A model generated the notes under the pieces. That model was not told the DNA's origin, ran no database searches, and saw only the letters and a list, made by a program, of their open reading frames with translations. The position numbers and the translations under genes were made by a program. Below, one piece after another: positions 35,396 through 58,905 of a stretch of 64,000 nucleotides of DNA. Location: positions 1-64,000 of the IMG/VR virus record IMGVR_UViG_3300042465_005589; one strand, written 5' to 3'. Every line of letters starts with the position of its first letter. Position 1 is the first letter of the stretch.

Positions 35396-35893
35396 ATGAA
35401 AAAAGTAATTAAACTATCTGAATCAAAACTTACTGAATTAGTTAAACGAATCATGTCTGAACAAGATAATGAAAGATATATGTTTTTCAGTAATTTAGAA
35501 CAAATTCATAGACAAACAGGTTTGTTATTGGAATTAAATAAAAATACCGTTGAAGGTGTTTTAGATGGGGGTCATGATTGGGCTCAAGACCATTTATCAA
35601 CCGCAAAAGAAAATATTGACCAAGTTTTTGATTTCATGATGAATGAAACTAAAAATGAAGACAATATGAATGTTTTAGAACAGGACTACTCGACTGACGT
35701 TGAAAGACCCACAAGTGATAGAGAACGTCAAGCAAAATCTTTATTTGGTGACAAATATGGTGCATATATACCTAATGATGTTATTAGGTACATAAGAAAA
35801 AATCCTGCACAATTCTTTAAACGACTCTACCAAATGTATGGGGACAAAGCTTATGAATATTTAGATAAATCAAAAAATAAAGGGGAAAATTAA
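35396..35893 (+). CDS. hypothetical protein with putative capsid-targeting leader
   Basis: N-terminus MKKVIKLSESKLTELVKRIMSEQ, near-copy of the leader of 54400..55419. Confidence 0.7.
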   Translation: MKKVIKLSESKLTELVKRIMSEQDNERYMFFSNLEQIHRQTGLLLELNKNTVEGVLDGGHDWAQDHLSTAKENIDQVFDFMMNETKNEDNMNVLEQDYSTDVERPTSDRERQAKSLFGDKYGAYIPNDVIRYIRKNPAQFFKRLYQMYGDKAYEYLDKSKNKGEN

Positions 35894-37449: not shown

Positions 37450-37683
37450 ATGGAACAACAACAACAAGAACTATTCGGAAAATTATTTAATACTATCCCA
37501 TTATATAATGAAGACCATTTAGACGTACTACTATCAACAATGGATAAAGAACAATCAATCTATATTCTAACTCAAGCCGTTAGTTTTGCATTTCACTCAG
37601 GCGTGTTTTCATTGGGGGAATCAGAAATTATTTCAAAATCAATAAGAACATTAAATAAAATTGAAAAAAATGTTGTGGGATAA
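37450..37683 (+). CDS. hypothetical protein
   Basis: 77-aa ORF. Confidence 0.6.
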   Translation: MEQQQQELFGKLFNTIPLYNEDHLDVLLSTMDKEQSIYILTQAVSFAFHSGVFSLGESEIISKSIRTLNKIEKNVVG

Positions 37684-37723: not shown

Positions 37724-37996
37724 ATGAAAAAAATATTCTTATCACTTTTACTTATTGTAAGTCTATCCTCATTCTCTCAAGATAACCCAAAACCAAAAAA
37801 CATTGATAAAGGTATCAATGTTTTGTTAGATTCGTTATCCAATGTTTATCGTGTTAAAGTAGGTGCGGTCATTGTTAATGATTACCCAAACTTAAGAACA
37901 ACAACAATCGTTTATGTTAAAAATGGTGAATTAGTTAAAAAAATTATTAAAACTGAAAAAAATCCACCAAAACGAGATATATTAAGTAAAAATTAA
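37724..37996 (+). CDS. small secreted protein (Sec/SPase I)
   Basis: MKKIFLSLLLIVSLSSFS|Q signal peptide with Gln+1. Confidence 0.75.
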   Translation: MKKIFLSLLLIVSLSSFSQDNPKPKNIDKGINVLLDSLSNVYRVKVGAVIVNDYPNLRTTTIVYVKNGELVKKIIKTEKNPPKRDILSKN

Positions 37997-39150
37997 ATTG
38001 TTTTATTACACAGTGCGGTAACACTATATCCGGTTTTAATTGTATCAGTACCAATTGGTGAATAAACTCTAACAATTGATTCTCCTGATGAACTATTGAA
38101 ATTTATTTTAATAGGTGCCTCTCCTATTGTATAAATAACAAATTCTTTAACACCTTTATTACAAAGTTTTTGAAGGTCTTTTAAAGCATATTCTACTTCA
38201 ATTCCACCTCTTTTAAATGTTTTTGATTTGGATGGGTCAACTAAAAGTTGTTCCAATAACTCTTGATAATTATTTGCTGTTATTTTTACAAGTTTATCAC
38301 CACTAACTGACACATTATTTCTTGAATTTATAAGAGTTAATTGATAAACATATAATGGGACCCATTTAAAATCAACATATTTATGTGGTCTAGTCGTCAC
38401 ATAACCAGTGTCTTGAATCACCTCTTCCCCCTTATTAAGAACAACTAATCTATCGGGAATGGTTCCGGTATCAAAAGTTACAACACCATTACCATATAAT
38501 TTTTCATTAGTTAATACATAATTAAGACTTGCATCTCCTTGACCCGCCTCAATTTTTACACCAACCCAATTACAAATATCTTTGGAATCTTTATCTTTAA
38601 CTTCCCCCGTTCCTTTAATATCGAAATTAACAAACTGTTCTTGTTTGTATAATTTAATTTTTTCAGGGTTTTTATTATCACCTTTAGTCTTATCATACGG
38701 AGTTTTACCTAATGTAACTTGATTAACATCTGTTGGAACTTGGATAGTTAAAACACCATTCTTGATTAAATCAGGAAATATCTCCTGAAAATATTTTTTA
38801 ACCGAATTTGCTCTTGCCAATGCCAAACTTCCCTTTGTCTCATATCCTTTAGGATTCGTCACATTTGATTCTCCAGATGTTATATTAACTATAAATGTCT
38901 TACCACCATTGTCTTTAATAAATTTTTCAATCTGAGGTTTTAATGCGATAATATCGTTTTTAACGGTTGGGGAATCAATCTGACCAAACCCAAATTTATC
39001 TCCAATACTTTGTATTGGGAATTCTGTGTTAATCAACGATTGTTTTGTAGAAACTTGTTCCAGGTTTAAATATTGTCGTTTTGTCGCGCCTTCGTGAAGA
39101 TTCATTATTCTATTTCTTTCCTCACTAGATATCTCAAATAAATTATTCAT
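37993..39150 (-). CDS. late protein with degenerate OmpA-C-like domain
   Basis: start MNNLFEISSEERNRIMNLHE; FGFGQ...IVNITSGESNVTN...SLALARANSVKKYF; late motif 39165-39171. Confidence 0.6.
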   Translation of the reverse strand: MNNLFEISSEERNRIMNLHEGATKRQYLNLEQVSTKQSLINTEFPIQSIGDKFGFGQIDSPTVKNDIIALKPQIEKFIKDNGGKTFIVNITSGESNVTNPKGYETKGSLALARANSVKKYFQEIFPDLIKNGVLTIQVPTDVNQVTLGKTPYDKTKGDNKNPEKIKLYKQEQFVNFDIKGTGEVKDKDSKDICNWVGVKIEAGQGDASLNYVLTNEKLYGNGVVTFDTGTIPDRLVVLNKGEEVIQDTGYVTTRPHKYVDFKWVPLYVYQLTLINSRNNVSVSGDKLVKITANNYQELLEQLLVDPSKSKTFKRGGIEVEYALKDLQKLCNKGVKEFVIYTIGEAPIKINFNSSSGESIVRVYSPIGTDTIKTGYSVTALCNKTI

Positions 39151-39205
39151 ATTTTTCTTTTTATATAAATACATTATTATTTATTTAAACTTAATATTTG
39201 TGCAT

Positions 39206-39255: not shown

Positions 39256-41112
39256 TTATCTCAATTCTCTTAAATCGAATGTTCTAACACCATCTACAGT
39301 AATTCTTCCGTAAAATCTGTTGTTCACCATTTTTTTCGCGTAACGAGTCATTATACCTTTAATCGGTGTAAAGTTGAATGGGTTGTACATTGTTGGTGTT
39401 AATTGTAATGGTACATACGGTGCGTAGATGTATCCTGTGTCTAACAATGATGTTCCTTTGTGTCCAATTAACACTTGGTTAGCTGGGAAGTAAGGGTCAC
39501 GGTAAACTTGGTAACGTCCTGCTAATGTTCCAACTCTTTCAATACCCATGTTATATTGGTCTTGTTCAGGAGAAGCATTAGATACGTGGAAGTACTCTAA
39601 ATCATCAAAGATAGCAGAAACCTCAGAAGATACAACAATCCAGTTTGCTCCACCTCTTAAAGTAGATTTGTGGATTTGTGCAGACAATTGGTTAATTGCT
39701 GTAATTAATGTTTGGTTCCAATCTTTTTGAGTGTAAGAAGTTACTTGAGAAATTCTTCTCCAACCATTGTAATCCCATCTCAAGTTCCATGCAGCACCTT
39801 TACGTAAATCTCTTAAGATTTCACGGTCAATTTCTGCCGCAACTTGCTCAGATAATAAAGCTGTTAATTCAGCTTCAGCATCGATGTTGTGGAAAGCTGC
39901 AACGTCTTGAGCTAACTCAGGAGACCATTGTGCTCTTAATTTTCTTTCTGTAACTGATACAGTAACTGAATCTAAATCGAAAGAAACCTCACCGATTTTA
40001 TCTTCAAATTCTAATTCTTCATAACGTCTGAAAACAGCTTTAAATGAAGTTGTTGCTAATGCTTCAGAAATAGTTGTACCTGTGTAACCATCTAACGATG
40101 AAGAATCACAATCAGCACATACTGGACAAGATAAATCAACTTCTAACCAAATACAACCATCAACGTCACATACATTTTTGAATGAACCACCGTTACCAGT
40201 AGATGCAAATGTTGTTTGAGTTGTGTTACCATATTTCACAATACCTCTACCATAGATTTGAGTTACAACTCTAAATAATAAAGCTCCTGTAGATACAGCA
40301 CATGGTGAACTAGCGTCAACTGTTAAACCAGCTCCTGTATAGATAATTAAATCAGATAAGAATGATTCAGTATCCATTTCGTTACCATCAGGTCCGATTA
40401 ATTTTCCTGCACCTGTGTCAGCAAAACCACACATTTTAATGATAACTTTTCTTGTGTTACCTGAAGCAATTACTGCTGCTCCATCAGTTGTTCCTGAAAT
40501 AACTGCATCAACTAAAACTCCACCTGTCCATTTTTGGATAGTTGTTGTTGCTGTGATAGCTGACCAACGACCTTTAGAATAATCAAATAATCCTGGTGGG
40601 TCTAAACTTGGTTCGTTACCTTCATAGAATAAATCATAAAGATTTTTTTCATATACTGGGTTGTTTGAGCCTGAACCTGCTGTGTAACCTTCACTTGGAG
40701 AACCTGGATAATTTCCTGGAGACCCGATTGGTGCGTAGTGCTCACCTGAATACTGACCGTCAATACCGTCTTTGTATCCTTGAATTTTTGGTACAAAATA
40801 GAATAATTTACCGATTGGTAAGTTCATTGCTTGTACAGAAACGATATCATTCGCTAATAATTTAGAGAATACTCTTCTTACGATAGGAAATACAACAGTT
40901 TCAAATGAACCTGAAGACCCGTCAGAAGTTGCTTCGTTTATTAAGAAAGACGCTTGGTTCTCATATAATTGAGCTACGTTTTCTCTTAAGTGACCTTTAA
41001 GACCTTCAAGAAATCCTAATTTGTCCCATTTGTTGATTGTGTCTTCTTTAATAACTTTAAGGTGTTTTAACCCGATGTTACCAACTAGACCTGATTCTAA
41101 TAATGCTCCCAT
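39256..41112 (-). CDS. major capsid protein (T4 gp23-like)
   Basis: VSVQAMNLPIGKLFY, RKLRAQWSPELAQD..AFHNIDAEAEL, EIDREI, YAPYVPL, FTPIKGIMTRY. Confidence 0.96.
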   Translation of the reverse strand: MGALLESGLVGNIGLKHLKVIKEDTINKWDKLGFLEGLKGHLRENVAQLYENQASFLINEATSDGSSGSFETVVFPIVRRVFSKLLANDIVSVQAMNLPIGKLFYFVPKIQGYKDGIDGQYSGEHYAPIGSPGNYPGSPSEGYTAGSGSNNPVYEKNLYDLFYEGNEPSLDPPGLFDYSKGRWSAITATTTIQKWTGGVLVDAVISGTTDGAAVIASGNTRKVIIKMCGFADTGAGKLIGPDGNEMDTESFLSDLIIYTGAGLTVDASSPCAVSTGALLFRVVTQIYGRGIVKYGNTTQTTFASTGNGGSFKNVCDVDGCIWLEVDLSCPVCADCDSSSLDGYTGTTISEALATTSFKAVFRRYEELEFEDKIGEVSFDLDSVTVSVTERKLRAQWSPELAQDVAAFHNIDAEAELTALLSEQVAAEIDREILRDLRKGAAWNLRWDYNGWRRISQVTSYTQKDWNQTLITAINQLSAQIHKSTLRGGANWIVVSSEVSAIFDDLEYFHVSNASPEQDQYNMGIERVGTLAGRYQVYRDPYFPANQVLIGHKGTSLLDTGYIYAPYVPLQLTPTMYNPFNFTPIKGIMTRYAKKMVNNRFYGRITVDGVRTFDLRELR

Positions 41113-43089: not shown

Positions 43090-43815
43090 TTAATGACCTA
43101 AATAATCGTTTAATTTTTTCATTAAGTCAAGTGATTTATTACCTGAATTACCAACATGTCTTTCAACACTCATTCTTTTCTCTTCATCTAAGTTTTCATC
43201 ATACAAACTTTTATCCTCTTTATTTAAAAATAGGTATGCTCCCGGTGTTGAAGGTGAAGACACTAAGTCAAAACAAATTAATTCAAAATCATCTTGTACT
43301 TCGTTTTGGTCACCAATTTTTTTAAGTGACCCAACACCCCTTGATGATATACCTAAAGTAACTCCTTGTCTTAAGTAATTTGCAGCTAAATCTCCTTTAG
43401 TTGAACAGATACCTCTTTCATGGTAACCCGGTGATGTCAATAATTTAATCTTTCCCATTAAGACGTTACCTTCCCACCATACTTCAGTGATTGCATGAGA
43501 AACTCTATCTAAATCAATTAGTGATGATTCCGGGTGATTTAACTCTGATAGAGCAGTACCCTTTTTAATCATTTTTTTATAATTCTCAGATTCTCTTTTT
43601 AATATACGTTCAGGGTATAATCTACCATTTCTATTTGGGGTGTCATATTTTTGTAATACGGCATAAAATTCAAATGGTTTTGAGTGGTCCAACATCTCGC
43701 TAGATTCTCTAATTAAAGTTTCGTTACGATTATCCTTTGGGTTAATATAACCCGCATCGTATTCAACTAATATACCTTTTCCTGATTCATTCGGTTGTAA
43801 TATTTTTAAACTCAT
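43090..43815 (-). CDS. prohead protease (T4 gp21-like)
   Basis: NRNGRLYP, ELNHP, VSH, GISSRGVGS, FDLVSSPSTPGA. Confidence 0.93.
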   Translation of the reverse strand: MSLKILQPNESGKGILVEYDAGYINPKDNRNETLIRESSEMLDHSKPFEFYAVLQKYDTPNRNGRLYPERILKRESENYKKMIKKGTALSELNHPESSLIDLDRVSHAITEVWWEGNVLMGKIKLLTSPGYHERGICSTKGDLAANYLRQGVTLGISSRGVGSLKKIGDQNEVQDDFELICFDLVSSPSTPGAYLFLNKEDKSLYDENLDEEKRMSVERHVGNSGNKSLDLMKKLNDYLGH

Positions 43816-45332: not shown

Positions 45333-47189
45333 TCAATCATTTAAGATTTTATCCAATTCTTTCTCGATATCACCTAAAGAATTTCTTGCTCGAGATAAAT
45401 CAATATACGAATCATCTTCAGTTAAACTACGGCTTTCCAATAAAATGTTCATATTCTCCCGTGTTTTTGATTCAGGTGTTAATTCTGCTTCACCACCAGC
45501 TTCAGGCGCTCCACCCGGTTCAGGTGCTCCACCCGGTTCAGGTGCTCCACCTAATTCAGACTCAAGACCACCTAAGGCACCTCCTCCACCAGCAGGTGGT
45601 GGTGCAGGAACAGCTCCACCAACAGCGGTTGTTCCGGATTTACTTGCGTATAATTTATCAATAGTATCAAATACTCCTGTATGAGTGATAATTGTTGCGG
45701 TATTAGTTAACTCAGCACCAACGGCTTTTTCAATACGTTGTTGTTGTAAATCTAATTTAATTTCTTCATCAGAGAATCCTAACACATGTTTTTTAGCCCA
45801 TGTTACCGATACCGGAGCAATACCTTCGATAGCAGCCACTGCGTCTTTATACAATAAAATTTTCTCTTTCCAAATATCGATTTTTAATAAATCGGCTTGT
45901 GAAGATGGGTTAGTTAATGCCAATGTAAAGTTTGATAATTCATCCTCAAACCCTAATAAAAATAAATGAATAATTGCGATTTTGTTTAATTCTGCAATCA
46001 TCGATTTTTGTATTCTATTAATTGTTCTTGCGAAACGAATATCCATTAATGATAGATTTTTACCATCACCAGTAACTTCTTCAAAACCTAAGAATGCTTT
46101 AGGTACACGAAGAGCGGTTAACAATTTCTTTTGGATGTATTCAATATCCGCAATCTCAGCTAAGTTTTGTGCTCCCGGTAATGTATCAATTGGGTTTGGT
46201 GCCGCAGGGTCACGAACAGGAATAAAGTAATCTTGGTCAACAGCCATTTGATTGAATCTCATATCAACATTACCTGTTTGAGAATCCACAACTTGACTTC
46301 TTTTAAATTTATTAGCAACACGTTGTACATACGGTTCAACATCTTTATCATCCATGTTACCAACATAAACTTTAAAAACACGTCTTTCAGGTGCTCTTGA
46401 TGTTCTATAAATTAACATCGCATCTTCAGACAATAATAATTGTTTCCATATACGTCTTGCTTTCTCTAACATAGAAGTACCATAAGGAAGTTTTCTATCA
46501 TCACCTAGTAATCTAAAGTGAGCTATCTCCCATGAATTAAACTCCATGTCTTTAACTTTCCATTTGAAACGTAAACCCCTATTTTCAAGTGGTTCATCAA
46601 CATTTGCCGCCTTCGCAGCCATACCACGTTCCAAACGTTCAATTTCAATGTTTGGTAATTGCATACATCCAACAATACCTTTTTCAGCATCCAATTTTAG
46701 ATACACAAAATTATCCCCATATTTACAAGTGTTTCTTGTCCACATAGGTAAGTTAGTATTTAAATCTAAAACATTGTTAAATAAATCCGTTAAGATACTT
46801 TTTATTCTTTTTGATTCAGAATAAATTTGTAACATATAACCATTTTGGTCAACAGTTGTTGATTCCTCACCATAGATATCTAATGCCGCAGAAATTTCAG
46901 GAGTGTACTCCATAGATTCATAATCATAAAATGACGCTAAACGAGTTGGTTCATAATATACCGCTTGGGTATATAAGTTACTCTCAATTTTAGTCCATTG
47001 GTTGGCTAAGTAATAAGTTTGTTGTGCCTGTAATTTTTCTCTCTCGTATTCGGCTTTAGATGTGGTTTTTAATAATTCCTTCTTATCTAACTTATATACG
47101 GGATAATCTTGGTTCAATAACGAGTTCGGTCCAAATGCTTTGGATAATCTTTGCCAAACTGTTAAATCATTATTTTGATTGTTTTCCAT
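45333..47189 (-). CDS. portal protein (T4 gp20-like)
   Basis: YESM...PEISAALDI, EDAMLIYRTSRAPERRVF, DYFIP.R, IDTLPG, ALRVPK. Confidence 0.94.
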   Translation of the reverse strand: MENNQNNDLTVWQRLSKAFGPNSLLNQDYPVYKLDKKELLKTTSKAEYEREKLQAQQTYYLANQWTKIESNLYTQAVYYEPTRLASFYDYESMEYTPEISAALDIYGEESTTVDQNGYMLQIYSESKRIKSILTDLFNNVLDLNTNLPMWTRNTCKYGDNFVYLKLDAEKGIVGCMQLPNIEIERLERGMAAKAANVDEPLENRGLRFKWKVKDMEFNSWEIAHFRLLGDDRKLPYGTSMLEKARRIWKQLLLSEDAMLIYRTSRAPERRVFKVYVGNMDDKDVEPYVQRVANKFKRSQVVDSQTGNVDMRFNQMAVDQDYFIPVRDPAAPNPIDTLPGAQNLAEIADIEYIQKKLLTALRVPKAFLGFEEVTGDGKNLSLMDIRFARTINRIQKSMIAELNKIAIIHLFLLGFEDELSNFTLALTNPSSQADLLKIDIWKEKILLYKDAVAAIEGIAPVSVTWAKKHVLGFSDEEIKLDLQQQRIEKAVGAELTNTATIITHTGVFDTIDKLYASKSGTTAVGGAVPAPPPAGGGGALGGLESELGGAPEPGGAPEPGGAPEAGGEAELTPESKTRENMNILLESRSLTEDDSYIDLSRARNSLGDIEKELDKILND

Positions 47190-47950: not shown

Positions 47951-49720
47951 TTATCTATTCCCAAATAACCAGCCGTATTTTAGATAATCGTCTTTACTTA
48001 TATTACCATTACTGAATTGACCAACTCTTTCATTGGTGTTAGGAATTACAGGGTTAAACGATATGGCTTCTCTAACATTATCATTATTACTAATCGACCA
48101 AGAATCAATCATCGCTTTGGTATGTTCAGTCACTTTTGTTAATTTACTGAATGAAGATTCTGCAACATATGTCGCCATAGCAATCGACATAATTAAATCG
48201 TCGTGATGACCCTTTTGATGGTCAGGTCGACCATTCATATAGATAAATGTATTCATTTCGTTATATAGTCTTGAACTATATATCCTGAACCCGTGTCTCA
48301 TAACTTCTTCATAAGACGCTATAATTTGTACCCTCTTATTGTTAAAGTTAATACCAGGTATTTTTTCAGCAGCTTTTGGGTCGTACTTCCATTTGTTCGC
48401 GGAATCAACACCATCAATGTATAAATCTTTGAAATTCATTTCCTGTAACTTTCTCGCTGTCGATACTCCCATTCCACCTGTAATATCAATAACGACAAAA
48501 CAAGAATATAATGTTGCCCATTTGTGACAAATTTCCGCCATCGTATCGGGGGGTAATTTTCCAACATATTCAGCAACTTGTTCCATAGTGTCAAAATCAA
48601 CAATTTGAAAAGAACTAAAATCTTCTGAATCTCCACGAGAAACGTCAACACCCATGATATATTTATGTCCAACAATAGGGTCTTTCCAAATCCAAAGAGC
48701 GTTACCCATTCTTTTACTTATTGGTTCTAAAATCATGTTTTCACGAATCTTATTCATCATAATAGAATCAAATACGTTATCACCCGAACCTAAAAAGTTA
48801 CATTCTAACTCCTGAGATACTTTACGTTTATCGTATTTTAATTTTTTAACCATCGCCTCAAACCAAGAAGAACAAGGTTTAAAACCGGCATCCATAATAA
48901 TTCTTAATTCTTTGTAATTTCTATCCTCATATGGTATTTTAGCCCAATCAATAATGTCGTCCGGTTTGTAATCTTCTTTATTTAATAAATAATGAATAAC
49001 ATCCTCAGTTTTAACTAAATATAAATCTTTAGTATAACGTGGGTCACGATACCAAAACATTTCTGTAATTTTGAAATCATTCATATTACGTAATGCTTGG
49101 TCATATATCTCATAATAAATCGCGTCATAACCATTAGGTGTGGAGACAACAATTACTTTACCACCCGTAGATAGAGAAGCCATACAGGCAGCCCAAAAGT
49201 CACTATCAGCCTCAATAAAGGCTGCCTCATCAAATATAAGTATGGTTGGTGTAAATCCACGTAAGGCATCCTTAGATGTCGCAACGGCTTTAACCTCACA
49301 CCCATTTGTTAATTTATAATGTTTTTGAGAATTTTTTGTTTTGTCAAAGTCAACACCTGTCCAAGAAGGCCATTGACCAACAAACGCTTTTATTTTATTA
49401 GCCATCTCTAATGAGGTGTCTAATTTATTGGCGATAATTAGAATTTTTTCAGGGGTTTCTTTTCTTGCGAATACAAGTTTTCGTGACATCCAAGCCGCAG
49501 TAACTGTTGATACTCCGGCTTGTCTATACTTCAATGCAATGTTTTCATTGTATTCTTCGTAATCTTGGAGTAAGGATAATTGGTCAGGAAAAAGTTCCAA
49601 TGGAACATATTTTTTAACTGTATTATCGTATGTTTCTAAATACGTTTTGAGTGCGTACTCAACATCTCTACTACATTTTACGTATTCTATTAATACTTGT
49701 TCTTTAGTTAAATTTGACAT
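47951..49720 (-). CDS. terminase large subunit
   Basis: KYRQAGVST, LIFDEAAF, STPNG, GVDVSRG, HDDL. Confidence 0.93.
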   Translation of the reverse strand: MSNLTKEQVLIEYVKCSRDVEYALKTYLETYDNTVKKYVPLELFPDQLSLLQDYEEYNENIALKYRQAGVSTVTAAWMSRKLVFARKETPEKILIIANKLDTSLEMANKIKAFVGQWPSWTGVDFDKTKNSQKHYKLTNGCEVKAVATSKDALRGFTPTILIFDEAAFIEADSDFWAACMASLSTGGKVIVVSTPNGYDAIYYEIYDQALRNMNDFKITEMFWYRDPRYTKDLYLVKTEDVIHYLLNKEDYKPDDIIDWAKIPYEDRNYKELRIIMDAGFKPCSSWFEAMVKKLKYDKRKVSQELECNFLGSGDNVFDSIMMNKIRENMILEPISKRMGNALWIWKDPIVGHKYIMGVDVSRGDSEDFSSFQIVDFDTMEQVAEYVGKLPPDTMAEICHKWATLYSCFVVIDITGGMGVSTARKLQEMNFKDLYIDGVDSANKWKYDPKAAEKIPGINFNNKRVQIIASYEEVMRHGFRIYSSRLYNEMNTFIYMNGRPDHQKGHHDDLIMSIAMATYVAESSFSKLTKVTEHTKAMIDSWSISNNDNVREAISFNPVIPNTNERVGQFSNGNISKDDYLKYGWLFGNR

Positions 49721-51105: not shown

Positions 51106-52098
51106 TTATTTTGTTTTTAACCCTAATTGATTAAATTTTAAAAAACTTGGTAATTCTTTTTTTATTGCCTTAGGAGCACCTTGTTTACTAGGGTCCGGAG
51201 CAAAAGGATGTTTTGGTTTAACACCAGGGCTAACTTTTGGTTTTGCTGGTGCTGTTTTAGTGTCCTCATCCATTTCATGTTTTTTTGCTTTAGGAGCTCC
51301 TTTTTTATTAGGGTCCGGTTGAAATGGGTGTTTTGGTTTAACACCAGGACTAACTTTTGGTTTTGCGGGAGCAGTTTTAGTATCTCCTTCAATTAATTTT
51401 AAAAAATCTTGTTTAGACATTTTAGGTGTTATATGTTTTTCAACTAATCTCATGATGTGTTTTTCTATTTTGTTTTCACCAATAGTAACACTTGGAGATA
51501 TTTTTGTCAAATTTTTTTTAAATCCTCCGGAGACAGCTGCCTCTAATTTCTTATCATAATCTTTAAAGTTAAAATCTTCTTTTGTTTCTTTTTTCTTTTC
51601 AGGTAATTTGTTAAATTTAGTGTTTTGGGCAAATTCATCAGCCATTCTACACCATTTATCTCTAACTTTTTTAGATTGAGATTTATCGTTACATCTTGCA
51701 AAAAAATATTTTTGTTGACTTTTAGATTCAAATTTTTCTTGAAGTTGACTGTCAGAATCATCATCCATACCATCAGGTCCTTGAACCTGTACAGGAGATT
51801 GACTTACCTCACCTTTATCAATATCATTATTATCTACATTACTATCTTCAGTAAATTCTACTTTACCATCAGGTAACATTTTAGCCATCGTCTTTCCTTG
51901 AGTAGATACACCTTTTTTAATTTCATCCGGTGTCGCAATAACTTTAGTTGATGTAACTGTTTGAACTTCTTTAGGTTCTTTCTTACTTTCCAATAAACGA
52001 GTAAACAATGAATTAACTTGTTTTTCTGATAAATATTGTAGTGTTGAGGCTTTAAATCCTTCTTTAATAAGTTTTAATTTTTTTTGATTAGTGTTCAT
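51106..52098 (-). CDS. hypothetical K/P-rich protein with 40-aa internal repeat
   Basis: start MNTNQKK; DTKTAPAKPKVSPGVKPKHPF.PDP...GAPKA twice (120-bp period). Confidence 0.65.
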   Translation of the reverse strand: MNTNQKKLKLIKEGFKASTLQYLSEKQVNSLFTRLLESKKEPKEVQTVTSTKVIATPDEIKKGVSTQGKTMAKMLPDGKVEFTEDSNVDNNDIDKGEVSQSPVQVQGPDGMDDDSDSQLQEKFESKSQQKYFFARCNDKSQSKKVRDKWCRMADEFAQNTKFNKLPEKKKETKEDFNFKDYDKKLEAAVSGGFKKNLTKISPSVTIGENKIEKHIMRLVEKHITPKMSKQDFLKLIEGDTKTAPAKPKVSPGVKPKHPFQPDPNKKGAPKAKKHEMDEDTKTAPAKPKVSPGVKPKHPFAPDPSKQGAPKAIKKELPSFLKFNQLGLKTK

Positions 52099-52498
52099 AT
52101 ACAACTTTTTTTTCAAATTCTAAAACGATATCTCGTTCATATAATTTATTTTTTACTGATTCTTCTGTTTCTCCAAACGAGAAAACTAGTCTAGTTTGTC
52201 TATCAAAATCAACATCATCACTTTCATTTTCATACCCTAAGGCTATTATACCATCCATAGAATCAATCATTGAAAAATAATCAGAGTTTTGAATTACTGA
52301 CATGGTTACCATATCATTCTTCAAAACTCCTACTTTTTTTATGTGTTCTAAATCAGGTGGGAGAGGATATCTATTGGACGGTTTTGAGTCCCAGTTTTCC
52401 CCCCAAATGTTTTCCGAACTATCTGAGAAAATAAATTCATATATGTTATCTCCTTTATAGTTTGGACCTAATTCATTAACATATATTAAATAACTCAT
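52088..52498 (-). CDS. hypothetical protein
   Basis: 136-aa coupled ORF. Confidence 0.65.
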   Translation of the reverse strand: MSYLIYVNELGPNYKGDNIYEFIFSDSSENIWGENWDSKPSNRYPLPPDLEHIKKVGVLKNDMVTMSVIQNSDYFSMIDSMDGIIALGYENESDDVDFDRQTRLVFSFGETEESVKNKLYERDIVLEFEKKVVYEH

Positions 52499-53808
52499 AG
52501 TACTTCACCTTTAGTGTTTACTCTAAGTTGTTTATTATTCATTTCAAATACCAAATTATTTTTATTTGTTTTACCAACTAATTTTGCGTTTGGATATTTT
52601 ATTACTAATTTAGTAGAAGCGACTTCTTGAGAAATACTTTCAGAAATTTGTTTGATTTTAGAAATTTTATTTTTTCTTTCTTCTTTAATCAAATTAGTTT
52701 TTTGTGTTTTATTTTCTAATAATTGTTTTTCTTTTTGGTCAATTTTAAAATAACCTCTTAATACTTCATCAACTTTTGATTCTGTAAACATACCTTCAAA
52801 CATATCTTCTAAATGATTTGCGTGGTCGTCTTTCATTGTGTGAGGATTTAATCTTCTATGTCTTGGGTGAGAAGGTAATTCATCTTCTTCAAAATCAAGT
52901 TCAAAGTCATTATCCATAAACCCTTCAGCCATTTCAGGTTCTACATCCATATCTGCTTGGATATCTTCAACTTCAGTATCATCGGTAAAATCTTCACCAT
53001 CCATATCATCTTCTTGACCAAATTCATTAGCTTCATCTTCTTCAAATTTATTCATGATTTCCTCTTTATCTTCTTCATCTAAAGATTCTAAATCTAACGC
53101 TGATAAGATTGAGTTTATAACGTATTTAACATCTTTAGATGTCATTGGTTCGTCTTCTTGAGCATCTTCAAAGGCTCTTAATTTTTGAGCCAATTTACCT
53201 GTTAGTTTTTGGATTACTTTTAAAGTAACAATTTCATCATCTTCAGGTTCCATTTCATCGTCACCTAAATCAATTTCTTCTTCGTCATCAATATCAAATT
53301 CATCTTCAGGTGCCGGAGCTGGAGCAGGTGCCGGAGCAGGTGCCGGAGCTGGAGCAGGTGCCGGAGCAGGAGCAGGTGCCGGAGCCGGTGCAGATTGTTC
53401 ATCAGTTTCCCCACCTTTCATTTTTAAGATATATTTTGTTGCGTCGTTTTCGTAAAATAAATTAACATTGGTTTCTTGACCTTCGTTAACATTAACTTCT
53501 TTTGCGATTAAATTAAGTCTTTTAAAAGCTTGAGAATAAGAAGAATAATATTTTCTATTTTTCATTGGCTCTAAATAATCTACTTCACCAGCAGATTCTG
53601 TTAAACTTCTTTTAATAACATAACCATTTTTTTCTTTGATAATTTGATAATTTCTACCATCAGCTAATGTTTTAGTATAATCAACTGAAGTACTCTCATT
53701 TATCGGTGTAGGTTTGTTTTCATTATATTTTGCGATTTCCATGATACGTTGAATCTTCTCCATACCTTGTAATTTTTCGCTACCAATCGGTCTTAAATTA
53801 TTTCCCAT
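52495..53808 (-). CDS. acidic protein with (Ala-Pro)n linker, probable core/internal head protein
   Basis: IQRIMEIAKYNE leader, (AP)n tract of about 14 units, D/E tracts, late motif 53839-53845. Confidence 0.65.
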   Translation of the reverse strand: MGNNLRPIGSEKLQGMEKIQRIMEIAKYNENKPTPINESTSVDYTKTLADGRNYQIIKEKNGYVIKRSLTESAGEVDYLEPMKNRKYYSSYSQAFKRLNLIAKEVNVNEGQETNVNLFYENDATKYILKMKGGETDEQSAPAPAPAPAPAPAPAPAPAPAPAPAPAPEDEFDIDDEEEIDLGDDEMEPEDDEIVTLKVIQKLTGKLAQKLRAFEDAQEDEPMTSKDVKYVINSILSALDLESLDEEDKEEIMNKFEEDEANEFGQEDDMDGEDFTDDTEVEDIQADMDVEPEMAEGFMDNDFELDFEEDELPSHPRHRRLNPHTMKDDHANHLEDMFEGMFTESKVDEVLRGYFKIDQKEKQLLENKTQKTNLIKEERKNKISKIKQISESISQEVASTKLVIKYPNAKLVGKTNKNNLVFEMNNKQLRVNTKGEVL

Positions 53809-53949
53809 TTGTTAATTTTTTATAAAATTATTTTATTTATAAATATATTCAGAATTAAGAATGTTAAGATTCTGGTATATTTTTATGGTTTAGTAAAAAC
53901 TTTTTTAAATTATTTATCTATAAATAGTTGGGAATTAAAAAAAAAATGT

Positions 53950-53957
53950 TATTTTTG
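53950..53957 (+). promoter_or_regulatory. Bacteroidota sigma-A -7 element
   Basis: TATTTTTG upstream of 53984. Confidence 0.5.
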
Positions 53958-53983
53958 TATCAAACATTAAAACATTTACTGAT

Positions 53984-54367
53984 ATGAAAAAACTAATCAC
54001 CATCATCCTTTTTATTTTTATCTCAAATTTATCCTTCTCCCAAATAAAAAGGGCGGGTAGTTTTTATGAATTAACTGATTTATGGAAAAAAGATTCTGTA
54101 TCGGTTAAACAATTAATTACCAAGTTTGATTTAAATATTACCAAATTAGATACGGTACAATTCTTTAAACAATTTAACTTAAATAAAGATTTACACACTA
54201 ATTACTCATACGAATGTTATGTGTATAAATTAGATAAGAAGACTAACACTATTTCAATGAAAGAATATTTTCGTCAAAGTCTAAAACCAAAATTAAACAA
54301 ATATGTTATGATTTTCTGTTTTGATAATGATAATGGTGAAAAAATAATTAACATCAAAATATTTTAA
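53984..54367 (+). CDS. small secreted protein (Sec/SPase I)
   Basis: MKKLITIILFIFISNLSFS|Q signal peptide with Gln+1. Confidence 0.75.
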   Translation: MKKLITIILFIFISNLSFSQIKRAGSFYELTDLWKKDSVSVKQLITKFDLNITKLDTVQFFKQFNLNKDLHTNYSYECYVYKLDKKTNTISMKEYFRQSLKPKLNKYVMIFCFDNDNGEKIINIKIF

Positions 54368-54401
54368 AAAAAAAGGGGTCTCGTTAAAGACCCTTTTTTT
54401 T
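54366..54401. terminator. bidirectional intrinsic terminator
   Basis: A tract-ggggtct...agaccc-T tract between convergent genes. Confidence 0.8.
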
Positions 54402-55419
54402 ATTTCATTATTGTTGGAAGTTTAATTATTAATCTTCGATTAGGTGCGGTTTCATTTTGATTTGTTACCTCCGGGAATTTTTTACCGGGTGCGAATTGGT
54501 CTGTTTCACCAATACCTTTAGGAATAAAATTTAACTTAATTCCTGGTAAACTAGATTTAAGAGTTGTTGCAATTTTCTGAGCTCTTTTTTTAGATAAATC
54601 CATATCATAATCTTTTCTTTTTTGACCTGATGCAACTTTACCTTCAGGGTTTCCATCTATAGATGATGAACAAATTACCTCAACATCTCCTTGAACATTA
54701 GAATAATTTGATTTAATAGATTGTACAAAATCATTAAATTCTTTTTGAGCCTCATTTGTTAGTTCAACACTATCAAAATTAAAAGGGCTTGTTATGTTTA
54801 ATTCAAATGGTTTGTCTACCGGTACTTCTTCCGGTTTATTTGAATTAAATGATGTATTGTATTGACCAGGATAGAAATTTATAAGATATGCTTTTCCTCG
54901 ACTTCTATAATATGTTTTAGCTGAGATTATACCATCTTTTGATTCTTGATATCTAGAGTTATTTTTAAAATAATCCCCCGGAAATTCTTGAATACTCGCA
55001 CCATAAACTATTGGAACACCAATAGGTGATTTTTTAGAAGGGGCATCTTGAGGTACTACAGCTATAAACGCAAAATCAAGATTTTTAGTTTGAATAGGTG
55101 CCGCATTAGAATTTACAATTCCTTGCCAATTTTCTGTGGTAAGTTCAATATTAGTTCTAAAATTTTCATCTACAACTTCTTGAGTTTTAACATTATATTT
55201 AAAATCGTATAAATTACCATTTAATGGTTGAGTCGGTTTAACTTCCCCATCTTCATCTACAGATACTTCATATAATTCCCCATCGATTATTTTAATATTA
55301 ATTCCAGTCGCTCCAATACTATAATAAGAGTTATCATCAGAACTATTTTGTTCACTCATAACTCTTTTAACAATTTTATAAAATTCAGACTCAGTTAGTC
55401 TAATAATTTTTTTTCCCAT
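54400..55419 (-). CDS. OmpA-C-like domain protein with putative capsid-targeting leader
   Basis: leader MGKKIIRLTESEFYKIVKRVMSEQ; FNFDSVEL...DLSKKRAQ...KGIGET...NRRLII. Confidence 0.8.
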   Translation of the reverse strand: MGKKIIRLTESEFYKIVKRVMSEQNSSDDNSYYSIGATGINIKIIDGELYEVSVDEDGEVKPTQPLNGNLYDFKYNVKTQEVVDENFRTNIELTTENWQGIVNSNAAPIQTKNLDFAFIAVVPQDAPSKKSPIGVPIVYGASIQEFPGDYFKNNSRYQESKDGIISAKTYYRSRGKAYLINFYPGQYNTSFNSNKPEEVPVDKPFELNITSPFNFDSVELTNEAQKEFNDFVQSIKSNYSNVQGDVEVICSSSIDGNPEGKVASGQKRKDYDMDLSKKRAQKIATTLKSSLPGIKLNFIPKGIGETDQFAPGKKFPEVTNQNETAPNRRLIIKLPTIMK

Positions 55420-56856: not shown

Positions 56857-58905
56857 ATGACAGAACCTATGGATGGTGGAAGTAACGGTGGAAATAATAA
56901 ATCAGTTAAGACTGATTCATCAACACCTGTATTAGACAATTTTAGTAGAGACCTTATTAAATTAGCCGAACAAGGAAAACTTGACCCGGTAATTGGTAGA
57001 GAAAGGGAAATCACTAGAATTGCTCAGATTCTTTCACGTAGAAAGAAAAATAACCCAATCATTATTGGTGAACCTGGTTGTGGTAAAACAGCAATCGTTG
57101 AAGGTCTTGCCATTATGATTTATAATGGGGAATGTCCAAGAAACTTAATGGACAAACGTATCGTATCATTAGATATGACATCAATTGTTGCCGGAACCAA
57201 ATATCGTGGACAATTTGAGGAAAGAATGAAAGTTATCATTGAAGAACTTCAAAACGAACCTAACATTATCGTATTCATTGACGAAATCCACACAATAGTT
57301 GGTGCAGGAAATTCATCAGGTTCAATGGATGCGTCTAACATCTTTAAACCAGCACTTGCTCGTGGTGAGATTCAATGTGTTGGAGCAACAACCTTAGACG
57401 AATATCGAAAAAACTTTGAGAAAGACGGAGCGTTAGAAAGACGTTTTCAAAAAGTTGTTGTGGATTCAGCAACCAAAGAAGAAACTTTGGAAATCCTTAA
57501 AAACGTAAAAGACAAATACGAGAACTTCCATAAGGTAACTTATACGGATGAAGTATTGTCTGTATGTGTTGATTTGGCTGACCGTTATATCACTGACAGA
57601 GAATTCCCGGATAAAGGTTTTGATATCATTGATGAAGTGGGAGCAAGAAGTCAAGTTGATATTAAGATGCCGGATTCAATTGAGAAATTGAAACAACAAG
57701 CGTCTGATATCAAACAAGAAAAGATTGATGTTGTAAAACAACAACGATATGAAGAAGCTGCGAACTTACGTGATAAAGAAAAACGTATCTTAACCAAACT
57801 TGAGACTGAAAAGAAAAAGTTTGAAGAAGAACTTCTTACTCACAAAAAAGAAATCACATTAGATTTAGTTTATGAGGTTGTGTCTAACATGACCAAAATT
57901 CCGGTAACCAAATTAAATGCTGATGAGACCAAACTATTATCTGAGATGGAGGCAAACCTATCTGATAAAGTTATTGGACAATCTGAAGCCGTTTCAAAGA
58001 TTGCTAAGTCAATCCGTAGAAACAGAATTGGTATTAAGGACCCGAACAAACCAATCGGTTCATTTATCTTCTTAGGTTCAACAGGTGTTGGTAAAACATA
58101 CTTGGCGAAACAACTAGCAAAACAAATGTTTGGTAGTGAAGATAATATGATTCGTGTGGATATGTCTGAATACCAAGAAAAACACACCATCTCAAGATTA
58201 ATTGGAGCACCTCCGGGATACGTTGGATACGATGAAGGGGGACAATTAACCGAACAAGTGAAAAACAAACCTTATTCTGTAATTCTATTTGATGAGATTG
58301 AGAAAGCTAACAAAGATATCTTCTCAACACTTCTTCAAGTATTAGACGACGGTCACCTTACCGATGGTATGGGGAGAAAGATTAACTTCAAAAATTGTGT
58401 CATCATTATGACCTCTAATGTTGGAGCTAAAAAATTACAAGATTTTGGTTCAGGAGTTGGTTTTAAAACCGGAACAAGCACTTATGCTGATGAAGAATAC
58501 AAACGTGATGTTCTTAAAAAAGAACTTAAGAAATTCTTCACACCGGAATTCTTAAACAGAATTGATGAGGTTGTTATCTTTAACACCCTAATTAAAGATG
58601 ATGTTAAGAAAATTGTGAAATTGGAATTAGACAAACTATCTAAAAGATTAGTTGGTTTGAAATACGATATTACATTTGATGATACCATTTTAGACCTAAT
58701 CTCTGAAGTTGGATTTGATGAGACCTACGGGGCTAGACCAATCAAAAGAGCAATCCAAGATAAAATTGAGGATTTTGTGTCCGAAGAAATTATCAAAGGA
58801 AATATGGTGGAGGGTGTTCCATACACCCTTATATCCGTAGAGAAAGAAGTGGTAGTTAAACCGGAAGTTGTTAAAAAGACAAGAAAGAAAAAAGAGGACA
58901 TATAG
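56857..58905 (+). CDS. clpC: ClpC-like AAA+ unfoldase lacking the N-terminal domain
   Basis: two AAA modules ([13 protein letters not shown]; [15 protein letters not shown]), UVR-like middle domain ([11 protein letters not shown]), ClpP-docking loop GVGF. Confidence 0.88.

What the first reader, a model, noticed from the sequence alone, without database searches (positions are those of the whole stretch)
53950..55419. Convergent pair 2: second secreted mini-protein facing an OmpA-domain protein
Seen: a 127-aa SFS|Q signal-peptide protein with a TATTTTTG promoter element converges through a bidirectional terminator on a 339-aa protein made of the KKIIRLTESE leader, a ~170-aa unknown domain and a clear OmpA-C domain. 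These two genes are the only clear SPase I proteins I found in 64 kb, and each faces one of the only two OmpA-like genes. The mature sequences of the two pairs look unrelated, and the OmpA domain is N-terminal in one and C-terminal in the other, as expected for polymorphic cognate pairs.
Basis: partly seen in the sequence, partly recalled or inferred. Interest (0 to 1): 0.75.

Follow-up and report, generated by a model that had tools for sequence, protein, structure and literature searches.

The report
Phage wall-binding protein with secreted partner
In a 318-kb lake-water jumbo phage of Bacteroidota, a late protein that binds the cell wall but has no export signal is always encoded tail-to-tail with a small secreted protein, and the two genes move and diversify together, which fits a virion protein paired with a blocker of second infections, a function that is untested.

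Summary
53984-54367(+) encodes a 127-aa protein with a signal peptide (SFS|Q). It converges through a two-way hairpin terminator (54368-54401) on 54400-55419(-). That 339-aa protein has a 23-aa N-terminal leader, a confidently folded middle domain of unknown fold, and a divergent OmpA-like domain (structural Z 13).

The pairing is not chance:
- In 48 of 50 related loci with a complete OmpA-like gene, and 4 distant contigs, the homologue is followed by a convergent exported ORF of 102-213 aa; the other two run out of DNA or are cut there.
- The pair relocated as a unit.
- It is far more divergent than its flanks.
- Its two variable parts fall into the same clusters.

The mini gene carries a consensus Bacteroidota host promoter. 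The leader ends in an invariant [LIMV]-x-E-Q, the type of site cut by T4-like prohead proteases, and the phage encodes an S77 protease.

My best reading is a head-packaged, processed, wall-binding protein plus a cognate periplasmic partner that excludes superinfection, as with T4 Spackle or T5 Llp. That function is inferred. The complex prediction gave no answer. "Polymorphic cognate pair" is partly supported. A toxin-immunity reading is not.

The parts
53919..53957 (+). Promoter region of the mini gene. It holds TTG (53928-53930), a 19-nt spacer and TATTTTTG (53950-53957), which is the Bacteroidota sigma-A type -33/-7 pattern. A T4-late-like TATAAATA lies at 53919-53926.
   Evidence: Sequence read. 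TAnnTTTG is enriched upstream of genes (67 observed, 35.6 expected), with a peak 20-40 nt before the start codon; TATAAATA occurs 31 times against 8.4 expected. The pattern is kept in 20 of 31 distinct related loci. The consensus is described in PMC9723704 and PMC2483708.
53984..54040 (+). Signal peptide of the mini protein (residues 1-19), with predicted SPase I cleavage SFS|Q.
   Evidence: It has a KK n-region, a 10-residue uncharged hydrophobic core, and small residues at -3 and -1. Q20 is invariant in 33 homologues, as expected under the Bacteroidetes Q-rule (PMC5837995). dN/dS is 0.05 with dS near 1.
54041..54367 (+). Mature mini protein (108 aa) plus stop codon. It has an orphan alpha+beta fold: two helices packed on a four-stranded sheet.
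   Evidence: The AF2 model has pLDDT 90 and pTM 0.81. No significant match was found in PDB, AFDB clusters or the Atlas. The family has 155 members, all 116-154 aa and all from this phage clade.
54368..54401 (.). Shared two-way intrinsic terminator hairpin: GGGTCT...AGACCC flanked by an A-run and a T-run.
   Evidence: One search reports it on both strands.
54403..54816 (-). C-terminal OmpA/MotB/Pal-like domain of the 339-aa protein (residues 202-339).
   Evidence: VIA Z is 13.0 to 8z5n_A and 11-12 to Pal, OmpA, TagL and PorE. Foldseek E is 3e-6. Pfam PF00691 scores 25-27.5 bits. L275, S276 and A280 are invariant and R279 nearly invariant (the LSxxRA motif); N327, R328 and R329 are invariant in 44 homologues.
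54820..55338 (-). Variable middle domain (residues about 28-200), rich in beta strands, fold unknown.
   Evidence: pLDDT is above 90. No fold match beyond OmpA-family two-domain proteins at TM 0.45. It is 4-39% identical across loci whose capsid proteins are 72-75% identical.
55351..55419 (-). N-terminal leader (residues 1-23), MGKKIIRLTESEFYKIVKRVMSE|Q, a putative propeptide or capsid-targeting sequence.
   Evidence: E23 and Q24 are invariant, with L, I, M or V at P3, in 44 homologues that carry two leader forms. The two forms are homologous (hhalign probability 98%). [LIVM]xEQ is 37 times denser at residues 12-50 than elsewhere in 112 family representatives. The leader is a low-confidence helix in the model.
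37724..37996 (+). Pair 1 mini protein (90 aa, signal peptide ...SSFS|Q).
   Evidence: TAnnTTTG lies at -28. Homologues are convergent on the 393-aa family in L004, L017, L027, L029, L032 and L033.
37993..39174 (-). Pair 1 large protein (393 aa; the true start is probably M9). It has a form-B leader ending LNLEQ and a degenerate OmpA-like stretch at about residues 80-146. It lies directly downstream of the major capsid gene.
43090..43815 (-). T4-type prohead protease (Peptidase_S77), the enzyme proposed to remove the leader.
   Evidence: Pfam E 1.2e-23.
39256..41112 (-). T4-like major capsid protein. In most relatives the OmpA/mini pair sits immediately after this gene.
   Evidence: Pfam Gp23 E 2.6e-74. 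Synteny. Five of its nine [LI]xE motifs lie in the first 60 residues.

Best explanation
This is a conserved two-gene cassette of a clade of uncultured T4-like jumbo phages from lake water. The signal peptides and promoters point to Bacteroidota hosts.

Gene 1 (339 aa) lies on the late structural strand. It has no export signal. It starts with a roughly 23-residue helical leader that ends in an invariant [LIMV]-x-E|Q. A variable beta-rich domain follows, then a divergent OmpA-like peptidoglycan-binding domain. I infer three steps:
- The leader is a T4-style capsid-targeting propeptide.
- The phage's S77 prohead protease removes it.
- The mature protein travels in the virion and reaches the wall of the next host during infection, where the OmpA-like domain holds on to peptidoglycan and the variable domain engages a host envelope component.

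Gene 2 (127 aa) is read from the opposite strand from a consensus host promoter. Sec exports its product and signal peptidase I cuts it before Q20. I infer that it is made early, sits in the periplasm of an infected cell, and neutralises either the incoming gene-1 protein or that protein's target. That would shut out superinfecting relatives, or protect progeny at lysis. The logic is that of T4 Spackle against gp5, or T5 Llp beside pb5.

Shown: the gene anatomy, the folds, the conserved pairing, joint relocation, joint diversification, purifying selection, and the promoter and terminator motifs. Inferred: cleavage, packaging, timing, peptidoglycan binding, and any functional link between the two proteins.
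For: - Anatomy.
- OmpA fold.
- No signal peptide in 110 of 112 family representatives.
- Leader: E23 and Q24 are invariant with an aliphatic P3. [LIVM]xEQ is 37 times enriched at residues 12-50. Forms A and B are homologous. Leader DNA is only 60-69% identical between paralogues, so selection acts on the peptide.
- Protease context: an S77 protease, portal, scaffold and Gp23 capsid gene are present. The capsid protein has [LI]xE clustered in its N-terminal 60 residues.
- T4 precedent: internal proteins are diverse bodies behind a conserved targeting sequence, and prohead proteases cut after Glu (PMC3012670, PMC5694885).
- Position: in most relatives the gene follows the capsid gene on the same strand.
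- Pairing: in 48 of 50 loci with a complete gene, plus 4 distant contexts; the other two loci run out of DNA or are cut there.
- Joint relocation.
- Cassette about 50% identical where flanks are 84-86%.
- Concordant clusters of middle domain and mini protein.
- Host-type promoter kept across lineages.
- Q-rule signal peptide under purifying selection.
- Some partners are lipoproteins, as Llp is.
- Precedents for the logic: PMC7677548 (Spackle is an early periplasmic protein that binds virion gp5) and PMC9586334 (Llp is adjacent to and downstream of pb5).
Against: - No experiment, virion proteome or transcriptome exists for this phage, and no RNA run was listed.
- The complex prediction gave ipSAE 0.05, 'no answer'.
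- In T4 itself, head internal proteins go to the cytoplasm rather than the periplasm, so a head-packaged peptidoglycan binder would be unusual.
- 27 ORFs in the genome carry the leader. That is many for head cargo, and only 3 of them have a secreted partner.
- A TATAAATA lies upstream of the mini gene as well, so late expression is not excluded.
- Concordant clusters and joint movement are also what simple linkage of neighbouring genes would give.
- Sequence similarity of the OmpA-like domain to solved ones is marginal (E 0.0076). Peptidoglycan binding is therefore not assured.
Confidence: 0.4

Rival explanations
1. The two genes are neighbours but have no functional link. The mini genes are early, host-promoter accessory genes (for example receptor masking or envelope remodelling) that sit antisense at the ends of late operons because a shared two-way terminator insulates them there. 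The pairing persists through linkage alone.
For: The genome has 44 convergent junctions, and several other exported ORFs also lie antisense to minus-strand genes. The complex prediction gave no support. Linkage alone explains concordant clusters. Two of the five SPase-I proteins are not paired.
Against: The pair moved together to a new site, while the old site kept its other pair. The arrangement recurs with non-homologous partners in distant lineages and in a third locus of the same genome. The permutation test gives P = 3e-5. In some lineages the stop codons overlap and there is no terminator between the genes.
Confidence: 0.25
2. The pair is a lysis or egress module. The large protein is released into the periplasm through holin lesions at the end of infection and grips peptidoglycan. 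The pre-positioned periplasmic mini protein times or limits this, as an antiholin-like or spanin-like accessory would.
For: The large protein lacks an export signal but has a wall-binding fold. In one distant relative an endolysin gene (PG_binding_1 plus Glyco_hydro_19) lies immediately upstream on the opposite strand. How Bacteroidota phages breach the outer membrane is poorly known (my own knowledge).
Against: Neither protein has a transmembrane segment, and mini127 has no lipobox, so the defining spanin features are absent. The usual position is inside the head module after the capsid gene. The conserved leader with a protease-type site is unexplained by this model. Lysis genes are not usually duplicated in tandem with variable domains.
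Confidence: 0.15
3. The pair is a polymorphic toxin-immunity (effector-immunity) pair in the strict sense. The large protein would be a periplasm-acting toxin and the mini protein its immunity protein.
For: A variable domain is fused to a conserved module and sits next to a small periplasmic protein. There is a weak Pfam hit to the Tis1 immunity protein family (E 0.088).
Against: No toxin, hydrolase or pore domain was found by Pfam, PHROGs, Foldseek or VIA. The large protein has no secretion or delivery domain. The genes are convergent rather than co-operonic. The Tis1 hit is far below its cut-off (13.4 against 27 bits). Both genes are under strong purifying selection within a lineage.
Confidence: 0.05
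4. The OmpA-like domain works in the cytoplasm. It would bind soluble or lipid-linked peptidoglycan precursors to shut down wall synthesis. The secreted neighbour would be unrelated.
For: The protein has no signal peptide. An OmpA-like protein (Pal) has been solved bound to a peptidoglycan precursor (entry 2aiz, listed).
Against: This does not explain the conserved pairing, the variable middle domain, the leader, or the position in the head module. There is no precedent that I know of.
Confidence: 0.05

Closest known systems
T5 receptor-binding protein pb5 (oad) with the adjacent lipoprotein Llp
   Same: A virion protein gene has a small Sec-exported protein gene immediately downstream of it (PMC9586334). 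Llp is made soon after infection and blocks superinfection (bioRxiv 10.64898/2026.03.26.714494). Some partners in this clade are lipoproteins. The pair behaves as a variable cassette.
   Different: There is no sequence or fold similarity. Mini127 is a soluble SPase-I substrate, not a lipoprotein. The large protein is not shown to be a receptor-binding protein, carries an OmpA-like domain, and sits in the head module rather than the tail module. The function is untested.
T4 Spackle (gp61.3) against the gp5 tail lysozyme
   Same: An early, small periplasmic protein neutralises a wall-acting virion protein of superinfecting phage (PMC7677548). Both phages have T4-like morphogenesis genes.
   Different: The Spackle and gp5 genes are not neighbours (my own knowledge). 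There is no homology. The target here would be a wall-binding protein, not a lysozyme. No binding was predicted.
T4 internal proteins (IPI-III, Alt) with a capsid-targeting sequence
   Same: A short conserved N-terminal leader stands in front of highly diverse bodies, the prohead protease cuts after a Glu, and the genome encodes an S77 protease (PMC3012670, PMC5694885).
   Different: The leader sequence differs from T4's and is longer (15-33 residues). Cleavage and packaging are not shown. T4 internal proteins act in the cytoplasm, and none has an OmpA-like domain as far as I know.
OmpA / Pal / MotB / MotY / PorE peptidoglycan-anchoring proteins (PF00691)
   Same: The C-terminal domain has this fold (Z 11-13) and keeps the LSxxRA and NRR motifs. 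The layout of an N-terminal accessory domain followed by an OmpA-like domain resembles MotY and Bacteroidota OmpA-family proteins.
   Different: There is no signal peptide, lipobox or membrane anchor. The sequence is very divergent: the family profile finds only 171 proteins among 1.84 billion and one PDB sequence at E 0.0076. The protein is phage-encoded and carries a propeptide-like leader.

Membership tests
OmpA-like peptidoglycan-binding domain (PF00691) | Sequence match to the family model at or above the curated cut-off | tested here: inconclusive
   The score is 25.1 bits against a cut-off of 27.2 in hmmscan, and 27.5 bits in the six-frame genome scan. Many homologues carry a precomputed PF00691 hit.
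OmpA-like peptidoglycan-binding domain (PF00691) | The beta-alpha-beta-alpha-beta-beta OmpA-C fold | tested here: met
   VIA Z is 13.0-10 to more than 25 solved OmpA-like domains over residues 202-339. Foldseek probability is 1.00 with TM by target 0.6-0.7.
OmpA-like peptidoglycan-binding domain (PF00691) | Conserved ligand-contacting residues (the Arg of LSxxRA, the NRR motif and the Asp of the TD motif) | tested here: inconclusive
   R279 is nearly invariant, and N327, R328, R329 and D255 are invariant. LSkkRA aligns with LSEKRA of FopA1. The equivalence of D255 to the ligand-binding Asp was judged by pattern only, not by superposition.
OmpA-like peptidoglycan-binding domain (PF00691) | A route to the periplasm (signal peptide, lipobox or membrane anchor) | tested here: not met
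   There is no N-terminal hydrophobic segment. Only 2 of 112 family representatives have one.
T4-type capsid-targeted, protease-processed head protein | The genome encodes an S77 prohead protease and T4-like head genes | tested here: met
   Peptidase_S77 E 1.2e-23, Portal_T4 E 7.5e-77 and Gp23 E 2.6e-74.
T4-type capsid-targeted, protease-processed head protein | A short N-terminal propeptide ending in aliphatic-x-Glu | tested here: met
   E23 is invariant with L, I, M or V at P3. The motif is enriched 37-fold in 112 representatives. The T4 consensus L/I-x-E is from my own knowledge; cleavage after Glu is stated in PMC5694885.
T4-type capsid-targeted, protease-processed head protein | Demonstrated cleavage and presence in the head | not testable with these tools
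   No cultured relative carries the gene and no proteome exists.
Superinfection-exclusion proteins of the Spackle or Llp type | A small protein exported to the envelope | tested here: met
   A signal peptide with Q at +1 is conserved and under purifying selection. The prediction used a heuristic, not SignalP.
Superinfection-exclusion proteins of the Spackle or Llp type | Early expression from a host-type promoter | tested here: inconclusive
   A consensus TTG-N19-TAnnTTTG is kept in 20 of 31 loci. This is a motif only, and a TATAAATA is also present. No RNA data were listed.
Superinfection-exclusion proteins of the Spackle or Llp type | Homology or shared fold with Spackle, Llp, Cor or Imm | tested here: not met
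   There is no Pfam or PHROG hit and no fold match.
Superinfection-exclusion proteins of the Spackle or Llp type | Blocks infection by the cognate phage | not testable with these tools
   This needs a cultured host-phage pair.
Polymorphic toxin-immunity pair | A recognisable toxin domain and a delivery or secretion domain | tested here: not met
   None was found by Pfam, PHROGs, Foldseek, VIA or the Atlas.
Two-component spanin | An inner-membrane-anchored subunit plus an outer-membrane lipoprotein subunit | tested here: not met
   The 339-aa protein has no transmembrane segment, and mini127 has an SFS|Q site rather than a lipobox.

The most novel reading that the evidence does not exclude
Jumbo T4-like phages of Bacteroidota may carry a general, modular system. 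Head-packaged, protease-processed ejection proteins share a conserved leader. Their bodies are variable envelope-targeting domains, some with a peptidoglycan anchor. Each is encoded tail-to-tail with its own early periplasmic or lipoprotein antidote. The cassettes would duplicate, move and diversify like effector-immunity pairs and would set superinfection-exclusion groups among co-occurring lake phages.
Probability: 0.2. Interest if true: 0.8.

Novelty: new variant of a known kind. Interest (0 to 1): 0.6.

Why it matters
Superinfection exclusion and the fate of virion-borne proteins are known from a few coliphages. Almost nothing is known for Bacteroidota phages, which are abundant in lakes, oceans and guts.

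This cassette gives a sequence-recognisable signature that could be used to find such systems in metagenomes. The signature is a leader ending in [LIVM]xEQ, no signal peptide, and a convergent exported partner that obeys the Q-rule.

It also offers matched variable pairs for testing specificity, and an unexpected use of an OmpA-like wall anchor by a virus.

If the leader is a capsid-targeting signal, 27 ORFs of this genome become candidate head cargo.

Tried and rejected
- Complex prediction of the 339-aa protein (residues 25-339) with the mature mini protein: ipSAE 0.05, the controls were not run, and the verdict was 'no answer'. I do not use it as evidence either way.
- Fold searches for the mini protein in PDB, AFDB clusters and the Atlas: nothing significant.
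- Fold searches for the middle domain: VIA wide and the Atlas found only the OmpA part, or loose two-domain matches at TM 0.45. Atlas feature leads to MotY_N and DUF4892 scored 0.42-0.47, too weak to use.
- Homology between the two mini proteins, and between the two large proteins, of the window: none outside the leader.
- Homology between the 127-129-aa and the 136-138-aa mini families: hhalign P = 0.004 over 73 columns, not established.
- A profile search for distant or cellular relatives of the mini protein: only the same clade came back.
- Cultured relatives: no DNA or protein match for the pair in 50,697 phage records. The nearest capsid protein, from Flavobacterium phage immuto at 40% identity, has no such module after its capsid gene.
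- Pfam and PHROGs on ten leader proteins and ten partner proteins: nothing informative.
- RNA evidence: no RNA run holding the stretch was listed.
- The E. coli-type promoter scan was uninformative: 15 sites found against 14.7 expected.
- dN/dS at larger distances is unreliable because dS is saturated, so I make no claim of positive selection.
- The idea that the leader is conserved as a DNA repeat for recombination is rejected. Paralogue leaders are only 60-69% identical in DNA.
Full report
**What the window is**

The window is the first 64 kb of a single 318,164-bp virus record, rated 100% complete by CheckV and 31% G+C. It carries a T4-type head module on the minus strand:
- large terminase, 47951-49720
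- portal, 45333-47189
- S77 prohead protease, 43090-43815
- an acidic scaffold-like protein, 41145-42695
- Gp23-type major capsid protein, 39256-41112

The nearest cultured capsid proteins are only 40-44% identical. They come from Flavobacterium phage immuto and Microcystis phage Mel-JY01. At least 20 lake-water metagenome runs hold the stretch under study word for word. The host is probably a member of Bacteroidota, on two grounds. Exported proteins end their signal peptides just before a Gln, as the Bacteroidetes Q-rule describes (PMC5837995). TAnnTTTG boxes are enriched 20-40 nt upstream of genes (consensus in PMC9723704 and PMC2483708).

53984-54367(+) encodes 127 aa starting MKKLITIILFIFISNLSFS|Q. 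54400-55419(-) encodes 339 aa starting MGKKIIRLTESE. Between them, at 54368-54401, is a G+C-rich hairpin flanked by an A-run and a T-run. It scores as a terminator on both strands. TATTTTTG lies at 53950-53957, 19 nt downstream of a TTG.

An alignment-based AlphaFold model of the 339-aa protein has mean pLDDT 84. It shows three parts:
- a low-confidence N-terminal helix (residues 10-24)
- a beta-rich domain (about 30-195) with pLDDT above 90
- a C-terminal domain (202-339) that matches solved OmpA, Pal, MotB, TagL and PorE domains at Z 10-13 and Foldseek E 3e-6

By sequence the OmpA-like domain is divergent. Pfam scores are 25.1-27.5 bits around a cut-off of 27.2. Only one PDB sequence is found, at E 0.0076. 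The LSxxRA and NRR motifs are nonetheless conserved across 44 homologues. The middle domain has no convincing fold match.

The mature mini protein models confidently (pLDDT 90, pTM 0.81) as two helices on a four-stranded sheet. It has no significant structural neighbour.

**The pairing is conserved, mobile and variable**

The 339-aa protein has more than 200 full-length homologues in metagenomes. The mini protein has 155, all from the same clade.

I examined 48 IMG/VR loci and five further contigs. Fifty of these loci hold a complete OmpA-like gene. In 48 of them the OmpA-like gene is followed by a convergent ORF of 127-138 aa with a signal peptide ending S[FY][SG]|Q or NA|Q. The other two run out of DNA or are cut there. 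Four much more distant family members were found with a profile search of 1.84 billion proteins. Each again has a convergent exported ORF of 102-213 aa, two of them within tandem double pairs and one a lipoprotein.

In most lineages the gene order is: protease, scaffold, capsid, then [OmpA-like protein facing a mini protein], then [393-like protein facing a 90-aa mini protein]. In the window's own clade, pair 2 sits instead between a nucleotidyltransferase-like gene and a 437-aa gene. Other lineages have a different gene at that site. Both genes therefore moved together.

The cassette is much more divergent than its surroundings:
- Capsid proteins are 72-75% identical across all loci.
- The OmpA-like domain is 50-79% identical.
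- The mature mini protein is 6-60% identical.
- The middle domain is 4-39% identical.

 In L024 the flanking genes are 84-86% identical to the window's but the pair is about 50%. The middle domain and the mini protein fall into exactly the same clusters, down to the relative distances between clusters.

Within a lineage both genes are under strong purifying selection (dN/dS 0.04-0.08). The signal peptide has dN/dS 0.05 with dS near 1, so both are real, constrained genes.

In the whole genome I count 410 genes, five SPase-I-type proteins and five lipoproteins using a crude rule. Three of the five SPase-I genes converge on a leader-bearing gene. The third pair is at 135508-135798(+) and 135816-136934(-). 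A permutation test gives P = 3e-5. The categories were defined after looking, so this is supportive only. The cross-lineage synteny is the stronger argument.

**The leader**

Across 44 homologues it comes in two forms:
- form A: MGKKIIKLTESELYNIVKRVLQEQ
- form B: MIKQTWNISEDEKNRILNLHESATKRLYLSEQ

Form B is the leader of the 393-aa family. Profile comparison shows the two forms are homologous (probability 98%). E23 and Q24 are invariant and P3 is always L, I, M or V. Among 112 cluster representatives of at least 300 aa, 78 have [LIVM]xEQ ending at residues 12-50. That is 37 times the density elsewhere in those proteins. It is followed by a polar linker. Only two representatives have a signal peptide.

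In this genome 27 ORFs start with the same kind of leader, many as MK[ILV]IITE[SN]Q. Their DNA is only 60-69% identical over the leader, so the peptide is what is conserved.

T4-type and giant-phage prohead proteases cut after Glu. T4 internal head proteins are described as highly diverse bodies behind a conserved capsid-targeting sequence that is cleaved off (PMC3012670, PMC5694885). The T4 consensus L/I-x-E is from my own knowledge. The phage has an S77 protease. Its capsid protein has five of its nine [LI]xE motifs in the first 60 residues, just before the segment that aligns with the N-terminal arm of mature T4 gp23. I therefore read the leader as a propeptide that targets the protein to the prohead core and is removed at E23|Q24. 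This is an inference from motif, context and analogy. Nothing here shows cleavage or packaging.

**The mini gene's expression signals**

TTG-N19-20-TAnnTTTG lies 22-34 nt before the ATG in 20 of 31 distinct loci, across both mini-protein families. In lineages that lack it, the mini gene directly follows another antisense gene. This is the consensus for the host's housekeeping sigma factor, which suggests transcription by unmodified host polymerase, that is, early. A T4-late-like TATAAATA at -65 in the window's clade means late transcription cannot be excluded.

**How it most likely works**

A wall-binding protein without an export signal can meet peptidoglycan in only two ways. It can be carried in by a virion, or it can be released when the cell lyses. 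A periplasmic protein made by an infected cell can meet it only during superinfection or at lysis.

Several features fit a virion-delivered envelope-acting protein with a cognate periplasmic partner that excludes superinfecting relatives or protects progeny from debris:
- the leader
- the position in the head module
- the host-type promoter
- the cassette behaviour
- partners that are sometimes lipoproteins

Two precedents exist. T4 Spackle is an early periplasmic protein that binds virion gp5 (PMC7677548). T5 Llp is a lipoprotein encoded adjacent to and downstream of the receptor-binding protein pb5 (PMC9586334). I put this reading at about 0.4.

The rivals and my estimates are:
- neighbours with no functional link: 0.25
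- a lysis or egress role: 0.15
- a strict toxin-immunity pair: 0.05
- a cytoplasmic precursor-binding role: 0.05

The one direct test available, a complex prediction, returned 'no answer' (ipSAE 0.05). It counts neither for nor against.

**Comparison with the known, and novelty**

The C-terminal domain has the OmpA-like fold. The protein fails one defining feature of cellular family members, namely a route to the periplasm. The leader behaves like a T4 capsid-targeting sequence but is not similar to it in sequence. The mini protein is an orphan in both sequence and fold.

The individual concepts are known: a propeptide-targeted head protein, and an exclusion protein encoded beside a virion protein gene. 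Their combination appears undescribed. It joins a wall anchor to a strict convergent pairing that recurs with non-homologous partners across an uncultured phage clade. I found no paper on it.

I rate it a new variant of a known kind, with interest 0.6. The anatomy and the conservation are solid. The function is inferred.

Noticed in passing
window 2-2800 (-), running off the start of the record: An ORF of more than 933 aa consists of about 800 residues of G-T-S / G-x-y collagen-like repeats after a short N-terminal domain, probably a fibre. It accounts for the 50% G+C of the first 2 kb, against 31% overall.
   Followed up: partly
Whole genome G000: for example window 35396-35893(+); C1:106810, 114683-116542, 137097-162139, 180115 and 286391-287542: 27 ORFs (79-393 aa) begin with homologous leaders such as MK[ILV]IITE[SN]Q..., MKKIIKLTESDL...EQ or ...EEKNRILNLHE...EQ, and their bodies are unrelated. 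They may be a large set of protease-processed head cargo. None has a Pfam or PHROG annotation.
   Followed up: partly
G000:C1:135508-135798(+) and 135816-136934(-): A third convergent pair in the same genome: a 96-aa secreted protein (...IYS|Q) faces a 372-aa leader-bearing protein with no detectable OmpA-like domain.
   Followed up: partly
L036:7553-9320; L073:3485-5417: In some relatives the second cassette's partner is a lipoprotein (lipobox LMTSC) rather than an SPase-I substrate, and the large protein is 507-531 aa.
   Followed up: no
window 52495-53808(-) and 51106-52116(-): The 437-aa protein has an (AP)16 tract and long acidic runs. The 336-aa protein has an internal duplication of DTKTAPAKPKVSPGVKPKHPF. 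Both are unannotated late-strand genes next to the cassette.
   Followed up: no
window 56857-58905(+): A full-length ClpB/ClpA-like double AAA+ ATPase (AAA_2 E 2.7e-70) is encoded by the phage on the strand opposite to its late genes, with a TAnnTTTG box at -63.
   Followed up: no
G000:C1:272190-277205(-): A 1671-aa ORF in the tail module, near a sheath-like 1108-aa gene, holds a sub-threshold OmpA-like stretch (20.8 bits in the genome scan). hmmscan of the whole protein did not recover it.
   Followed up: partly
window 37450-37683(+): A 77-aa ORF (MEQQQQELFG...) precedes the 90-aa mini gene on the antisense strand and is conserved next to mini genes in many relatives (MEQ[KR]QPIGLLF...). The antisense unit is therefore sometimes a two-gene operon. 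A TATAAATA lies at -23.
   Followed up: no
L006/L040 (IMGVR_UViG_3300043434_000734): In a distant relative the OmpA-like/mini pair lies next to an endolysin gene (PG_binding_1 plus Glyco_hydro_19) instead of the capsid gene.
   Followed up: no
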